Assembly: GCF_006345805.1 (NCBI RefSeq)
Contig: NC_043020.1
Span: 11,966,001-12,030,000, forward strand
Length of the DNA: 64,000 nt
Origin: Octopus sinensis
Taxonomy: Eukaryota
Direction of reading: 5' to 3'
In this document: positions 3,031 through 62,910 of the stretch, piece after piece
How positions within the stretch are numbered: the stretch's first letter is position 1
Layout: every line of letters starts with the position of its first letter
Notes under the pieces: model-generated
Databases searched by the model: none
What the model was told of the DNA's origin: nothing
Seen by the model: the letters and a program-made list of their open reading frames with translations, nothing else
Made by a program: the position numbers and the translations under genes

Positions 3031-6000
3031 ATGTCTACAGGTCTGACAGAAGAAGACATAAGAGATTTCCTTCATGACAACCCAGAATTCGTTGATAAAT
3101 GGCTTTCAGAACACGGCATGGAAGAAATAGCACCCGATTTTTCGAAACATAAGATTTTATCAAAAGCTGCCCTAAAATTTTGGGGTAAACTGTCTCCCAA
3201 ACAAGATCCAACTCAATATCTTGAGAATTCGGTTGAGGAACCAGAGTTACCTGTTAGTAAGATGAATTTGTTCAGAGATACACTCAAAGTGGTTCAGTCA
3301 GACATTAATTCAACGAGAGTTACTAAAAGAATTCTTCAAAACGCCTGCATTTTGCTTCGTTGTCATGCAACGAGCCTTCTTTTGGTCCAAGGAGTTGGTA
3401 AAAATCGATTTCTTATTTCGGAAACCAGTAATATTTCAACTAGATCTCAACTTGGCGAAATAGATAATACAGAAGAAGACACGGTTCATCTACCATTTGG
3501 CAAAGGAATTGTTGGTTTCGTAGCGGAAAACGAATGTTTAGTAAATATAAAAGAAGCGTGGCGTGATTCACGCCTTACAGAAAATATGAGAGAGACTAAC
3601 TGTCAAATTAAATCGATTCTTTCGCTACCAATTTTCGATAAAAACGATCGTGTGATAGGAGTAGCTAAAGCATTGAATAAATTGGATGGAGATAATTTCG
3701 ATTCTAGTGATGAAAACTTATTCGAATGTTTTTCGAAAATTTGTGCTCTGAATCTCAACAATGATCAGTTCTTTAAGGCTGCCCAAGGAGAAAAAATACG
3801 GCATCAAATGTTATTGAAACTCGGTCGGTGTTTTTTGAAAACTGGGGAGGATTTCCAGAGACTTGTATCTGAAATTCTTCAATACGCCATCAAAATGCTG
3901 GACTGTGATAATATTAGCATCTATTTAAGTGATGATATAGACGATGCACGTCAACTGACCGAGTCAGCGAACGTTTTACAACTTTTGAAGGGAGACACTA
4001 AAGTAAAAAATGCACCTATAGACCCGATGTTCATATCATTTATTGAACGAAATATGAATAGTGCTAGCATGGTGAATGTAGTTAGCGTGACTAATTTACA
4101 TGATAGAACCAAATGGAAAACAAAAATCACAGTGGATGGCGATATACTAAATTGGATAATTTGCGTGACAATACACGGTGATCGCGATAGTGTAATTGGT
4201 TATATGATGTTTCTCAGGAAGACGATTAATACCTTTAGTGAAAATGACATTAATATGTTGGAGACATTTGCCATTTTCTGCGGACTGGCGATTTATAACG
4301 ACCATTTGTACAAAAGTTGCAATAAAATAACATCCAGCCAAGATTTCGCATACGAATTGCTTCAGTTTCACACGACTTGCGAAGAAGAAGAAGCTTATGA
4401 CATGCAACATCAAGACATTCGCACAACAAGTCACTATAAACTTTACTCTTACAATTTTATTAGTTATTTATACTCAGAAGACGAACAGGTTATATTGACT
4501 GCTCTTATCTTTATAGAAATGAACGCTCTAAATTCATTGAAAATATCCAAGTTTACTTTGTATAGATGGATACTAACTGTGAAAAAAAACTATCGTCCTC
4601 TTACCTACCATAATTGGCAGCATGCTGTCAATGTTACTCAAGCAATGTTTTGTATGTTGACCACCGGTAGATTACAAGTATATTTCAAAGAATTTGAACT
4701 AATATGTCTGCTAATAGCTTGCTTGTTTCATGACATTGATCACAGAGGAACCAATAATGCATTCCAAGTGAATACAGCATCGCCTCTTGCTACTCTCTAC
4801 AATACGTCTGTGTTGGAAAACCATCATATAAATCGAAGTATCATGATATTGCAAAATGAAGATACAAATATTTTAAAAAACGTTTCAGCTGAAAAATATA
4901 AGAAGGCTCTCAAATTTATCGAGAAAGCAATCCTCGCTACAGACCTTGTAGATTATTTTTTGAAAAGAAACACTTTTAGAAAACACATCGAAGACGGTAA
5001 CAAAACTTTTGAGTCTCGAGAAAGCGTTGAATTATTAACTAGTATGATAATGACTGCAGCTGATCTTACAGCTATTACCAAGCCATGGGATTTTCAAAAA
5101 TTCTCAGTCATGTTAATGGCTGAGGAATTCTTTACACAAGGAGACATGGAAAGAGATTATGATATTCCTCTGTTGCCGTTAATGGATCGCAATTGTATAC
5201 GCGAAATACCACAAATGCAAGTTGGTTTTATTGATTTTGTGAGTACACTGCTTTATAAAACTTTGTCAGAACTGCATGAAGAATTGGAGCCTTTATATCA
5301 TGGGATGCTCGACAACAGAGCTCACTGGGCTGGTATTGCAAATGGTGATGAAATATTTGATATTAAGAAAGAGTATGAATTAGCTTTAAAGACGTTTTAC
5401 TCAGGAGTACCGATATCGAGTACGACTACTCCGATGTTACAAGTAAATGTAGCCACACAGACAGTTCTGACATATTTAAATGTGGTGCTAGAGCAACAAA
5501 CCATCCAAACCATACTTTCTTATCCTATTGAAGAATTAGTCACTGTGGATGATCTAACAATACCTGTTTCACCGGAAACTGAGATGATTACTAGAGTAAC
5601 AAAGAATTGTCAAACCGATGAACGATCCCCAACTGTAAGCGAAGTATCTGTTCAGACTTATGTACCTGCTACACGTACTGGTGAAGCCTCACCCGATGAA
5701 CCACAACCACACGTGTTCAGACGACAACCGTCCACTTTAACAAAATCTGGGAACTACTCGGGATCAGAAACTATAGTTTCATCACGTTCCAAGTCGTCAT
5801 TATACAGGTCGCCTTATACAGCTAGACGATCAAGTTGTTTCGATGAGCTTCTTTACGAAAGACGCCGGGAATTAGAGCAGGAAAAAGGAAAATCATTTAG
5901 AAATGCACTCTGTTTAGAAAAACCTTTGTCTATAAAAAGATCATCGCGTGTTATTTTACCACCGAACCCAATACGACGGGAAAGCACACAAACACGTTCC

Positions 6001-6450
6001 AGTGATTATATATTCAACAGAAGTTCGTCTACCATACGGTTTTCGATTGGGGAAATTTCTCAAAGAGATGAAGTTTTGTTTGAAAACATTCCGAAGAAGT
6101 CTTCTTTGAAATCTGAAATATCGGTGAAATCTCCCATTAAGGAGAACGTTCTTGAGCCAGTCAAAAACGATAATGTTCGTAAGAAGAGTAAAGAGGTACA
6201 GATAACTACGCCAAAAAAGAACAGACTGTCTTGGACGGATGCATACGAGGGTAGTGATAGTACAAAAAGTAGAATACCTGTGGCTCGAAAGTCACTTTCT
6301 ATACCGAGAGATCGAAAGGACAGTGTGGTTAAAAGATCGAGTTCAATAATGAAAAAAGATACGACACAGAATATGGAGTTTCGAAAACGAAAATGTGTGA
6401 AAGCTGTTCCAAAGAATTCTCAAAGGCGTAAAAGATTGCTATTTGTGTGA
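3031..6450 (+). CDS. Intronless GAF-GAF-PDEase cyclic nucleotide phosphodiesterase, PDE5/6/11 family, type A copy 1 (1139 aa as assembled)
   Basis: GAF-A NKxxxxxFxxxDE motif (LNKLDGDNFDSSDE); catalytic YHNWQH, HDIDHRG, LENHH, ILATD, ADLTAITKPW and PQMQVGFIDF. One G is missing at ~6438 relative to A2/A3, turning AICVIC* (stop would be 6456-6458) into LFV*. AATAAA at ~6505. Confidence 0.95.
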   Translation: MSTGLTEEDIRDFLHDNPEFVDKWLSEHGMEEIAPDFSKHKILSKAALKFWGKLSPKQDPTQYLENSVEEPELPVSKMNLFRDTLKVVQSDINSTRVTKRILQNACILLRCHATSLLLVQGVGKNRFLISETSNISTRSQLGEIDNTEEDTVHLPFGKGIVGFVAENECLVNIKEAWRDSRLTENMRETNCQIKSILSLPIFDKNDRVIGVAKALNKLDGDNFDSSDENLFECFSKICALNLNNDQFFKAAQGEKIRHQMLLKLGRCFLKTGEDFQRLVSEILQYAIKMLDCDNISIYLSDDIDDARQLTESANVLQLLKGDTKVKNAPIDPMFISFIERNMNSASMVNVVSVTNLHDRTKWKTKITVDGDILNWIICVTIHGDRDSVIGYMMFLRKTINTFSENDINMLETFAIFCGLAIYNDHLYKSCNKITSSQDFAYELLQFHTTCEEEEAYDMQHQDIRTTSHYKLYSYNFISYLYSEDEQVILTALIFIEMNALNSLKISKFTLYRWILTVKKNYRPLTYHNWQHAVNVTQAMFCMLTTGRLQVYFKEFELICLLIACLFHDIDHRGTNNAFQVNTASPLATLYNTSVLENHHINRSIMILQNEDTNILKNVSAEKYKKALKFIEKAILATDLVDYFLKRNTFRKHIEDGNKTFESRESVELLTSMIMTAADLTAITKPWDFQKFSVMLMAEEFFTQGDMERDYDIPLLPLMDRNCIREIPQMQVGFIDFVSTLLYKTLSELHEELEPLYHGMLDNRAHWAGIANGDEIFDIKKEYELALKTFYSGVPISSTTTPMLQVNVATQTVLTYLNVVLEQQTIQTILSYPIEELVTVDDLTIPVSPETEMITRVTKNCQTDERSPTVSEVSVQTYVPATRTGEASPDEPQPHVFRRQPSTLTKSGNYSGSETIVSSRSKSSLYRSPYTARRSSCFDELLYERRRELEQEKGKSFRNALCLEKPLSIKRSSRVILPPNPIRRESTQTRSSDYIFNRSSSTIRFSIGEISQRDEVLFENIPKKSSLKSEISVKSPIKENVLEPVKNDNVRKKSKEVQITTPKKNRLSWTDAYEGSDSTKSRIPVARKSLSIPRDRKDSVVKRSSSIMKKDTTQNMEFRKRKCVKAVPKNSQRRKRLLFV

Positions 6451-61640: not shown

Positions 61641-62480
61641 TATATATATATATGTGTGTGTGTGTGGGGGGGTGTTCGTGTGTGTGTGTGTGTGTGTGTG
61701 AGGCGCAATGGCCCAGTTGTTAGGGCAGCGGACTCGCGGGCGTAGGATCGCGGTTTCGATTCCCAGACCAGGCGTTGTGAGTGTTTATTGAACGAAAACA
61801 CCTTAAGCTCCTCGAGGTACCGGCAGGGGGTGGTTGCAATCCCCGCTGTACTCTTTCGCCACAACTTTCTCTCACTCTATCTTCTGTTGGCCTGTCCGCT
61901 TAGCCAGCGGGGTGGCGTCATTTGAAGGCTGAAACAATGCGAAGCGCCTTGTGACCAGCGATGTGTAGCAACATCTGTAAGCCTGGTGGGTCACAGTGAT
62001 ATATATGTATGTATGTATGTATGTATGTATGTATGTATGTATGGGAATGCATATGTATATTTTTTTGTATATATACATATATATATATATATATATATAT
62101 GAATGCATATATGTTTTTGTATATATATATATATATATATATATATATATATATATATATTATATACATACATATATGTATACGGATGTATGTATGTATA
62201 TATATATGTATGTATGTACTTATATATGTATGTATATGAATGCATATGTATATTTTTGTTGTGTGTATATATATATATATATATATATATATATATATCA
62301 ATAAATAATAAAGGGTGAAATTATTAATTTAGAAATAATCATTAATATCACCAAATAGAGTTCGACATGTTAAAGACCCCTTCAAGGAAGGTTTAAATAA
62401 TACTAAGTACTTAAGGGTTCAGCAACGATTTGCCTCACTACATGTATGGATGTATTTATGTATGTCCTGCCAGTACCGCC

Positions 62481-62910
62481 AAAATTAATATAGGGACGCA
62501 AGTGAAATTTTAGTAGAGCCATGTCCATTGAACCATCCAAAACATTTTCAGACTCATGGTTAAAAACAAATAAACCCCCTACAAGTATGAATTTTGATGG
62601 AGCAGAACAAGAAGCGATGAGTTGTTCGTCAGACATAGGTAGCTGGACAGCTGCTAGTGTAACATTTGAAACGCCTGAACAAAAGATGAGAGCTTTGAGA
62701 CCTGTGATCTCTAAACAGACGCTAGACATGGAAAGATTTACAATGAGTGCAGAAGAAGAGAGAAAAATTTCTAATGTTGCAGTGAAAGACCTCAATCAGG
62801 TCGAAGAAGAAGATGTTTAAGAAAATTCCACGGAGTAAACCAGTTCTTACAAGCAAGAGAACCAAAAGGCAGGACGATTTTATGGAAAGTATGTGTGTAA
62901 GATTTCATAA
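62481..62910 (+). pseudogene. Orphan 3' fragment of a B1-type PDE gene (tail only); flank homology continues to ~63170
   Basis: Matches B1 ~23802-24272 with a 41-bp deletion and several 1-nt deletions. No matching catalytic or GAF sequence lies upstream. Confidence 0.9.

What the first reader, a model, noticed from the sequence alone, without database searches (positions are those of the whole stretch)
3031..62910. Tandem array of intronless, diversified PDE5/6/11-type phosphodiesterase genes
Seen: six full-length single-exon GAF-GAF-PDEase genes of at least four sequence types (A x3, B1, B2, C) plus a remnant, all on the + strand within 60 kb. Established: animal PDE5/6/11 genes are normally multi-exon and low in copy number. 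Inference: a retroposed founder was amplified by tandem duplication into a lineage-specific cyclic-nucleotide signalling family. The A, B and C types are deeply diverged yet keep catalytic residues, which implies long-term purifying selection. I cannot confirm that it is undescribed.
Basis: partly seen in the sequence, partly recalled or inferred. Interest (0 to 1): 0.85.

Follow-up and report, generated by a model that had tools for sequence, protein, structure and literature searches.

The report
Octopus intronless PDE5-like gene array
This stretch of an octopus chromosome carries a real tandem array of intron-free, fast-evolving cGMP-phosphodiesterase genes that are found in octopods and in unidentified, possibly cephalopod, relatives; the genes are annotated in databases, but I found no paper describing the array.

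Summary
The array is real. The window is Octopus sinensis, 97.9% identical in DNA to O. vulgaris. It holds six GAF-GAF-PDEase genes on the + strand (A1, A2, B1, C, A3, B2) plus a 3' fragment of a B1-type copy.

Only A2 and A3 are open from Met to the C-terminal CAAX box. B1 and B2 each carry a 1-nt deletion in GAF-A. C has three such deletions in its tail and A1 has one. All six are deletions at short base repeats, and the four genes concerned have an intact O. vulgaris counterpart. Assembly error is therefore as likely as decay.

The N gap is intergenic, but it sits at a repeat-unit junction, so continuity is unknown.

Coding regions are single-exon in O. vulgaris, O. bimaculoides and Argonauta. 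A canonical bivalve homologue spans 42 kb with at least 14 exons.

The family is monophyletic (bootstrap 100) inside the PDE5/6/11 group. It shares a CAAX box with the canonical invertebrate PDE5-like (fly Pde6) lineage.

No canonical cephalopod orthologue surfaced, so the parent gene may be lost.

Constraint is relaxed (dN/dS 0.25-0.67 in the core). The B1 type has replaced the otherwise invariant substrate glutamine.

I rate it a new variant of a known kind, of moderate interest.

The parts
3031..6450 (+). A1: A-type GAF-GAF-PDEase gene, 1139-aa ORF. A 1-nt deletion at 6437 changes the last 8 residues and removes the CAAX box.
9769..9868 (.). Assembly gap. It is intergenic and sits at the junction between the sequence downstream of an A unit and the sequence upstream of the next A unit. 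It may hide further copies.
11383..14811 (+). A2: intact A-type gene, 1142 aa, ending in CVVC. It is the positional and sequence orthologue of O. vulgaris CAI9740192.
21169..24272 (+). B1: B1-type gene. A 1-nt deletion (GGG to GG) at about 21631-21637 shifts the frame in GAF-A. The O. vulgaris orthologue (1033 aa) is intact. It ends in CKIS. The substrate pocket carries Y612F, Q817E and F820Y (human PDE5 numbering).
25979..27172 (-). Reverse-transcriptase fragment of a retroelement between B1 and C. It is also present in O. vulgaris.
27896..31312 (+). C: C-type gene. The ORF is open for 952 aa (to 30754) through all three domains. The tail is then broken by 1-nt deletions at 30696, 30770 and 31253. 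The intact O. vulgaris gene is 1136 aa and ends in CMIF.
38012..44360 (+). Non-LTR retrotransposon (endonuclease ORF 38618-39583, RT ORF 40199-41677) plus a tandem-repeat block. It is absent from the orthologous O. vulgaris site.
47598..51005 (+). A3: intact A-type gene, 1135 aa, ending in CVIC.
57047..60375 (+). B2: B2-type gene. A 1-nt deletion (AAA to AA) at about 57645 shifts the frame in GAF-A. The O. vulgaris orthologue (1108 aa) is intact. It ends in CTIS.
62482..62910 (+). Remnant: the 3' ~140 codons of a B1-type gene, with a 41-nt deletion and frameshifts. It is followed (63347-63981, inverted) by the same RT element that follows B1.

Best explanation
The window is part of a larger array of intronless paralogues of the ancient CAAX-box PDE5-like phosphodiesterase. 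That lineage includes Drosophila Pde6 and sea-urchin sperm PDE5. The array has at least ten gene models in O. vulgaris.

**Origin (inferred).** One processed mRNA copy of the multi-exon gene inserted in an ancestor of the octopods, possibly of all coleoids. It acquired expression and evolved about twice as fast as the canonical gene.

**Amplification (shown).**
- The founder split into A, B and C types. The A and C types had already separated when Argonauta and Octopus diverged.
- It was then amplified by DNA-level tandem or segmental duplication with gene conversion.

**How the proteins work (inferred from conserved residues).**
- GAF-A binds cGMP allosterically; its NKFDE motif is intact.
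- The catalytic domain hydrolyses cGMP.
- A 270-380-residue tail rich in Ser, Lys and Arg carries a basic-Cys motif (R-K/R-K-C), and in the A and C types also an RRxS-x-DE motif. A terminal CAAX box anchors the enzyme to membranes by prenylation.
- B1-type copies keep the metal site but replace the substrate-recognition glutamine, so they probably have altered or lost nucleotide recognition.

**Tissue (weakly supported).** The likely site of action is the male germ line.
For: **Domains and class**
- Pfam finds GAF, GAF and PDEase_I in all six copies.
- Human PDE5 aligns over residues 83-776 of A3 at E = 1e-111.

**Intronless coding regions**
- The gene range equals 3 x (aa + 1) in O. vulgaris, O. 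bimaculoides and Argonauta.
- Argonauta has an unannotated second intact ORF upstream of its annotated copy.
- Contrast: a canonical bivalve gene of 860 aa spans 41.9 kb with at least 14 exons. O. sinensis PDE11, 872 aa, spans 293 kb.

**DNA-level duplication**
- Positions 1-9663 match 44556-54205 at 99.3%.
- The A2 unit matches the other A units at 97-98%.
- The B1 and B2 units match at 91% including non-coding flanks.
- A copies show mosaic site patterns across the two species, which points to gene conversion.

**Phylogeny**
- The octopod family is monophyletic at bootstrap 100.
- Adding three unidentified single-ORF sequences also gives bootstrap 100.
- The family is excluded from the PDE11 subclade that contains the octopus's own PDE11; that subclade has bootstrap 99.

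**Link to the canonical lineage**
- A CAAX box is present in the family and in canonical PDE5-like proteins from cnidarians to molluscs. It is absent from the PDE11 sequences and the catfish PDE5A that I checked.
- Family members score higher against canonical sequences (549-589 bits for C) than against PDE11 (498-523) or PDE5A (431).

**Constraint**
- All metal-site and NKFDE residues are kept.
- Core dN/dS is 0.2-0.67.

**Expression**
- A 'cGMP-specific PDE-like' gene is testis-only in O. sinensis, FPKM 13.9 versus 0 (PMC11202624).
Against: - No direct hallmark of retroposition (poly(A) remnant, target-site duplication) was looked for; in a family this old such marks may well have eroded.
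- The sister group of the family is unresolved (bootstrap 15-18). Attachment to the CAAX lineage therefore rests on the CAAX box and on modest score differences.
- Four of the six window copies carry frameshifts.
- Core dN/dS of 0.5-0.67 between close species is high for an enzyme.
- The testis-specific transcript in the paper could not be mapped to this array.
- The tree is neighbour-joining only. The family sits on long branches.
Confidence: 0.75

Rival explanations
1. The window copies are a decaying array. The frameshifts in B1, B2, C and A1 are real, so in O. sinensis most of this segment is pseudogene and only A2 and A3 function.
For: - There are six frame-breaking 1-nt deletions.
- A truncated remnant shows that copies do die here.
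- O. vulgaris also has a frameshifted B2-like copy and split C-like models.
- RefSeq marks the window's C as LOW QUALITY. It models two near-identical B1 copies with the same bypass of the frameshift.
- Recent dN/dS is 0.4-0.7.
Against: - All six changes are single-base deletions at short base repeats; none is an insertion. This is what I would expect of long-read consensus errors (my own knowledge, not tested).
- The downstream frames stay free of stops. C's tail has three shifts yet every segment remains open.
- The O. vulgaris counterparts of the four affected genes are intact.
Confidence: 0.25
2. Copy number is inflated by the assembly. A1 (1-9768, ending in the N gap) is a misplaced haplotype or duplicate of the A3 unit, not a separate locus.
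For: - A1 and A3 differ by only 32 mismatches and 14 indels over 9.66 kb.
- There are no mismatches between about 3 and 6.1 kb or between about 7 and 9 kb, and the remaining differences fall mostly in or near simple-repeat stretches.
- The segment ends in a gap.
Against: - A1 carries a 21-nt insertion shared with A2 but not with A3.
- O. vulgaris independently has three A-type genes: CAI9740188, CAI9740192 and CAI9740195.
Confidence: 0.15
3. A conserved multi-exon parent (canonical CAAX-type PDE5-like gene) still exists elsewhere in octopus genomes. The array is then an added retrogene family, not a replacement.
For: - This is the usual outcome of retroposition.
- My searches use word filters and list caps. 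The 50%-identity representative library would hide such a gene inside another cluster.
Against: - The oyster canonical protein returned 120 top hits. They come from chitons, gastropods, bivalves, annelids, brachiopods, nemerteans, echinoderms, hemichordates, arthropods, rotifers, amphioxus and cnidarians, at 50-93% identity. None is a cephalopod, although three annotated Octopus proteomes are in the database.
- Searches with C and with a mixed profile also returned only family members and PDE11 or PDE2 from cephalopods.
Confidence: 0.4
4. The introns were lost in place: the original locus was converted by a reverse-transcribed cDNA, or lost its introns stepwise. It was not a retrocopy at a new site.
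For: - No canonical parent was seen. That would follow automatically if the array is the parent locus.
Against: - Simultaneous loss of about 15-20 introns, together with doubled evolutionary rate and a new long tail, fits a relocated retrocopy better.
- No synteny data could be obtained.
Confidence: 0.1

Closest known systems
[quoted passage not shown]
   Same: - GAF-A, GAF-B and catalytic architecture.
- Intact NKFDE and metal-binding residues.
- A basic stretch plus a C-terminal CAAX box.
- Best-scoring named relatives.
   Different: - The canonical genes are multi-exon (at least 14 exons over 42 kb in Tegillarca) and I saw one or two per species in the few species sampled. They are 53-60% identical across phyla.
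- The octopus genes have no coding introns and sit in tandem arrays.
- They are only 32-40% identical to any canonical protein.
- Their tails are 270-380 aa against 65-190 aa, and carry a family-specific R-K/R-K-C motif.
Vertebrate PDE5A and PDE6
   Same: - Best solved-structure matches: PDE5 at 377 bits over GAF-A to catalytic, PDE6 at about 340 bits.
- The glutamine switch and hydrophobic clamp are conserved in the A, B2 and C types.
- Vertebrate PDE6 is also prenylated at a CAAX box (my own knowledge).
   Different: - The catfish PDE5A sequence checked has no CAAX box.
- PDE6 depends on inhibitory gamma subunits, which are absent from invertebrates (PMC4906994).
- Identity is only 33-36%.
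PDE11, including the octopus's own PDE11 (XP_036356755)
   Same: - GAF-GAF-PDEase architecture.
- Similar percent identity, 34-40%.
   Different: - Octopus PDE11 clusters with fly and tick PDE11 (bootstrap 99), apart from the family.
- It has no CAAX box.
- Its gene spans 293 kb.
Retroposition followed by tandem duplication in lophotrochozoan and cephalopod gene families (for example the nAChR expansion in PMC6896357; single-exon protocadherin and GPCR arrays of octopus)
   Same: - Intronless founders amplified into lineage-specific tandem arrays.
   Different: - Those families are receptors or adhesion molecules.
- Here the amplified gene is an intracellular second-messenger enzyme, and its parent may have been lost.

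Membership tests
Class I cyclic-nucleotide phosphodiesterase (Pfam PDEase_I) | HD-type metal site: H-N-W-x-H, H-D-x-D-H, E..H-H, T-D and D764 (human PDE5 numbering) | tested here: met
   All residues are present in A1-3, B1, B2 and C. PDEase_I E = 1e-68 to 1e-83.
Class I cyclic-nucleotide phosphodiesterase (Pfam PDEase_I) | Invariant substrate-recognition glutamine (Q817) and hydrophobic clamp (F820) | tested here: inconclusive
   Met in the A, B2 and C types. Not met in the B1 type (window B1, O. vulgaris B1 and P0022), which has Q to E, F to Y and Y612 to F.
GAF-containing PDEs (PDE2/5/6/10/11) | Tandem GAF-A and GAF-B N-terminal to the catalytic domain, with the NKFDE motif in GAF-A | tested here: met
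   Two GAF hits per protein. NKFDE is intact; C has D-Q in place of D-E. The alignment to full-length PDE5 covers residues 83-776.
PDE5/6/11 subgroup | Groups with PDE5, PDE6 and PDE11 rather than PDE2 or PDE10 | tested here: met
   A bootstrap-99 NJ clade holds the family, canonical PDE5-like, PDE11 and fish PDE5A. PDB ranking is PDE5 377 > PDE6 340 > PDE2 259 > PDE10 197 bits.
Canonical CAAX-type PDE5-like orthogroup (fly Pde6 / urchin sperm PDE5) | C-terminal CAAX box preceded by basic residues | tested here: met
   A2 CVVC, A3 CVIC, B1 CKIS, B2 CTIS, O. vulgaris C CMIF, Argonauta CITS. The same feature occurs in most canonical sequences checked, from cnidarians to molluscs (19 of 22). It is absent from PDE11 and fish PDE5A.
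Canonical CAAX-type PDE5-like orthogroup (fly Pde6 / urchin sperm PDE5) | Phylogenetic nesting within, or sister to, the orthogroup | tested here: inconclusive
   The NJ tree places the family next to the canonical clade, but with bootstrap 15-18 only and on long branches.
PDE11 | Clusters with bilaterian PDE11 | tested here: not met
   Octopus PDE11 (P0143) groups with fly and tick PDE11 at bootstrap 99. The family lies outside that group.
Vertebrate PDE6 | Regulation by the inhibitory gamma subunit and a photoreceptor role | not testable with these tools
   Gamma subunits have not been found in invertebrates (PMC4906994).
Processed retrogene family | No introns in the coding region, while homologues outside the lineage are multi-exon | tested here: met
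   Gene range = CDS length in four octopod genomes. Tegillarca has at least 14 exons over 41.9 kb.
Processed retrogene family | Poly(A) remnant, target-site duplications, or an identifiable parent gene in the same genome | not tested
   I expect these marks to be eroded at this age, and did not look for them. No parent was seen in protein searches, but no genome-wide tblastn was possible.
Prenylated membrane-anchored PDE | The CAAX cysteine is actually farnesylated or geranylgeranylated | not testable with these tools
   Sequence motif only.

The most novel reading that the evidence does not exclude
Orphan-retrogene takeover. In octopods, and perhaps in all coleoids, the ancient CAAX-type PDE5-like gene has been lost. 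That gene is otherwise conserved at 50-60% identity from cnidarians to chordates. A fast-evolving intronless tandem array has functionally replaced it. One subtype of the array (B1) has swapped the invariant substrate glutamine for glutamate. The swap gives either a new nucleotide specificity or a non-catalytic sensor, possibly in the male germ line.
Probability: 0.35. Interest if true: 0.65.

Novelty: new variant of a known kind. Interest (0 to 1): 0.45.

Why it matters
- cGMP phosphodiesterases of the PDE5/6/11 group are slowly evolving, multi-exon genes in the homologues examined here.
- An intron-free, rapidly diverging array of at least ten copies in octopods adds an intracellular signalling enzyme to the list of cephalopod lineage-specific expansions. 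Those known so far are mostly receptors, adhesion molecules and zinc fingers.
- If the canonical gene is truly gone, this is a clear case of a retrogene family replacing an ancient housekeeping-type parent.
- The B1 subtype offers a natural experiment on the 'glutamine switch' that sets cyclic-nucleotide specificity.
- In practical terms, the window shows how deletion-type assembly errors and a repeat-junction gap distort the annotation of such arrays. RefSeq bypasses one frameshift with a pseudo-intron.

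Tried and rejected
- **Literature.** I ran seven searches: octopus or cephalopod with phosphodiesterase and intronless, tandem duplication, gene family expansion, PDE5/PDE11 or testis, plus the ENA accession. None found a description of this array. An eighth search, for a citable source on Drosophila Pde6 prenylation, found nothing usable.
- **Testis-biased Pde transcript.** I could not link the transcript reported in PMC11202624 to the array. 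Its supplements hold no matching identifiers.
- **Oyster and apple-snail gene structure.** Two look-ups failed because those isoforms are not on record. A Tegillarca protein worked instead.
- **Profile search with a mixed alignment.** It returned only 13 hits and was uninformative for breadth.
- **Host of ENA assembly ERZ21867824.** It could not be identified. Its loci share no repeats with octopus, whereas Argonauta does.
- **Frameshifts in B1 and B2 as a shared intron.** Rejected. They lie at different protein positions, and each is a single missing base.
- **PDE11 origin.** Rejected on the tree and on the absence of a CAAX box.
- **Structure prediction.** Not run, because full-length PDE5 aligns at E = 1e-111.
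- **Maximum-likelihood phylogeny and codon models.** No program for these was available.

Full report
**Source of the window.** The window is cephalopod DNA at about 36% G+C. It aligns to Octopus vulgaris chromosome record OX597837.1 at 97.9% identity over 13.9 kb. One protein in the database is shown without accession or name, which is how the tool marks a protein that the window itself encodes. It equals the window's C ORF exactly and sits on the same 31.2-Mb record as the Octopus sinensis RefSeq proteins XP_0296507xx. The window is therefore O. sinensis.

**The observation.**
- Six long + strand reading frames carry GAF, GAF and PDEase_I, with PDEase_I E = 1e-68 to 1e-83.
- tblastn with the A and C proteins finds exactly six loci: A1 3031-6450, A2 11383-14811, B1 21169-24272, C 27896-30754, A3 47598-51005 and B2 57047-60375.
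- B1 and B2 are each split between two frames. The shifts lie at different protein positions. Each is a single missing base in a short run: GGG to GG in ...IPFGK|GIVG..., and AAA to AA in ...SVPI|KDRD....
- C is open through all three domains. Its tail is then broken by three 1-nt deletions relative to the intact 1136-aa O. vulgaris gene.
- A1 has lost its last residues, including the CAAX box, to another 1-nt deletion.
- So only A2 and A3 are complete. All six lesions are deletions at short base repeats, with no insertions, and the downstream frames remain free of stops. B1, B2 and C have intact positional orthologues in O. vulgaris, and all three O. vulgaris A-type genes are intact. This looks like the deletion-biased consensus error of long-read assemblies (my own knowledge of such errors), but real decay cannot be excluded.
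- The remnant (62482-62910) is the 3' end of a B1-type gene with a 41-nt deletion and frameshifts.

**The gap.** The N run (9769-9868) is intergenic. Its left flank is homologous to the sequence downstream of A2. Its right flank is homologous to the sequence upstream of A1 and A3. In the other two units the sequence homologous to the left flank runs on into a B gene. The gap may therefore hide one or more copies, and continuity is not established.

**Duplication structure.**
- Positions 1-9663 match 44556-54205 at 99.3%.
- The A2 unit matches both of those at 97-98%.
- The B1 unit (18289-23497) matches the B2 unit (54188-59375) at 91%, non-coding DNA included.
- Amplification was therefore at the DNA level.
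- A1 and A3 show no mismatches over most of their length, yet A1 shares a 21-nt insertion with A2.
- O. vulgaris also has three A genes. Site patterns are mosaic between copies and species, which indicates gene conversion.
- The remnant is followed by the same reverse-transcriptase fragment that follows B1. This suggests a larger repeat unit that continues beyond the window.

**Extent of the array.**
- In O. vulgaris at least ten gene models with consecutive accessions (CAI9740185-95) lie between 28.737 and 28.846 Mb.
- O. sinensis RefSeq has XP_029650736-45, including copies not encoded in this window.
- O. bimaculoides has orthologues of A and C, further types, and a dispersed copy between OATP genes.

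**Intron content.**
- For every family member looked up, the gene range equals three times (residues + 1). This holds for O. vulgaris (3411, 3102, 3081, 3327 and 3408 nt), O. bimaculoides (3276 and 2922 nt) and Argonauta hians (3018 nt).
- Argonauta has a second, unannotated intact ORF 6 kb upstream of its annotated copy.
- By contrast a canonical bivalve homologue (Tegillarca, 860 aa) spans 41.9 kb with at least 14 coding exons.
- The octopus's own PDE11 (872 aa) spans 293 kb.

**Classification.**
- The best solved-structure matches are PDE5 (377 bits, residues 83-776), then PDE6, PDE2 and PDE10.
- I built a neighbour-joining tree from 102 sequences and 676 columns with 100 bootstraps. The 18 octopod sequences form one clade (bootstrap 100). 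The A and C subclades each contain an Argonauta sequence.
- Three unidentified sequences join as outgroups (bootstrap 100). Two come from the ENA metagenome assembly ERZ21867824 and one from a Logan assembly. Each of the two ENA sequences is a single ORF on its contig; the locus of the Logan protein was not examined.
- The whole group lies in a bootstrap-99 clade with canonical invertebrate PDE5-like proteins, PDE11 and fish PDE5A. It lies outside the PDE11 subclade that holds octopus PDE11. Its immediate sister is unresolved.
- A C-terminal CAAX box preceded by basic residues is shared with most canonical PDE5-like proteins checked, from cnidarians to molluscs (19 of 22). It is absent from PDE11 and fish PDE5A.
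- Bit scores also favour the canonical lineage. I therefore derive the family from that lineage.

**Missing parent.** The oyster canonical protein returned orthologues at 50-93% identity from twelve phyla, including four other mollusc groups. It returned no cephalopod. Family members are only 32-40% identical to any canonical protein, whereas oyster and fly are 53% identical. This fits loss of the parent and accelerated evolution of the retro-derived copies. The searches are filtered and capped, so I give loss about 55-60%.

**Constraint** (Nei-Gojobori estimates from my own script).
- In the N-terminal-to-catalytic core, dN/dS is 0.25-0.67 for recent paralogues and orthologues. For example, O. 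vulgaris against O. bimaculoides C gives 0.67 (141 non-synonymous and 52 synonymous differences).
- For the deep A/B/C comparisons it is 0.2-0.34, with saturated dS.
- The tails run at 0.4-1.5.
- Open 3-3.4-kb frames have persisted across dS > 1, and all metal-site and NKFDE residues are conserved. Together these show long-term but relaxed purifying selection.
- B1-type genes (window B1, O. vulgaris B1 and P0022) share Y612F, Q817E and F820Y in the substrate pocket.
- The tails carry a family-specific R-K/R-K-C motif 25-35 residues before the CAAX box. In the A and C types they also carry an RRxS-x-DE motif.

**Function.**
- By homology these are GAF-regulated, membrane-anchored cGMP phosphodiesterases.
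- An O. sinensis gonad study lists a 'cGMP-specific phosphodiesterase-like' gene as testis-only, FPKM 13.9 versus 0 (PMC11202624). I could not map that gene to this array.
- A named member of the canonical clade is the sea-urchin sperm PDE5.
- Male germ-line expression is thus a reasonable but unproven guess.

[quoted passage not shown] Seven full-text searches found no description of the array. The mechanism of retroposition followed by tandem duplication has been described for lophotrochozoan nicotinic receptors (PMC6896357, seen). I rate this a new variant of a known kind, of moderate interest.

Noticed in passing
window 38012-44360: A non-LTR retrotransposon (endonuclease ORF 38618-39583, RT ORF 40199-41677) plus a tandem-repeat block is present here. 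It is absent from the orthologous O. vulgaris interval, so it is a recent insertion or a polymorphism.
   Followed up: partly
window B1 21169-24272; L001:3197-6298; L003:10001-13081: B1-type genes share three substrate-pocket changes: Y612F, Q817E (the otherwise invariant 'glutamine switch') and F820Y. The changes are conserved in two species and two paralogues, while the metal site is intact.
   Followed up: partly
window 6437, ~21631, 30696, 30770, 31253, ~57645: All coding-frame lesions relative to O. vulgaris or to paralogues are single-base deletions at short base repeats. There are no insertions. This points to systematic consensus error in this assembly.
   Followed up: partly
window 21376-21569: RefSeq models XP_029650737 and XP_029650740 (966 aa) skip the B1 frameshift with a 194-nt 'intron' and read about 20 codons out of frame. 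This is an annotation workaround, not evidence of splicing.
   Followed up: partly
window 25979-27172 (-) and 63347-63981: The same reverse-transcriptase fragment follows B1 and, at 80% identity, follows the B1-type remnant. This suggests a larger duplicated unit that continues past the window's end.
   Followed up: partly
window 19038-19148, 37409-37519, 54942-55052, 61255-61361; L004 several sites: A ~110-nt core of a ~430-nt interspersed repeat is shared at about 80-85% with Argonauta hians. It looks like a SINE-type element common to incirrate octopods.
   Followed up: no
L004:1320-4523 (Argonauta hians BAAFZT010000077.1): An unannotated intact 1067-aa C-like PDE ORF lies 6 kb upstream of the annotated Argonauta copy. 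Tandem intronless copies therefore exist there too.
   Followed up: partly
L007 and L008 (ENA ERZ21867824 contigs ctg120600l, ctg114626l): A 'metagenome' assembly of unknown host carries two single-ORF sister-lineage PDEs. One (P0149) has degenerate catalytic residues (H657Y, H to V, Q to M) and a long Glu/Lys-rich tail, yet keeps the basic-Cys motif and the CAAX box.
   Followed up: partly
window 1-324, 680-1260, 34020-34530, 35409-35706, 41787-44074, 44354-45826, 61999-62310; (GATA)n 9930-10055: Minisatellite and microsatellite blocks generate the spurious 200-250-aa ORFs listed on both strands (for example 574-1299 and 43838-45865). A GATA microsatellite abuts the gap.
   Followed up: no
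window A1/A2/A3 versus O. vulgaris CAI9740188/92/95: Variable sites are distributed mosaically among the six A-type genes of the two species. This indicates gene conversion between array members.
   Followed up: partly
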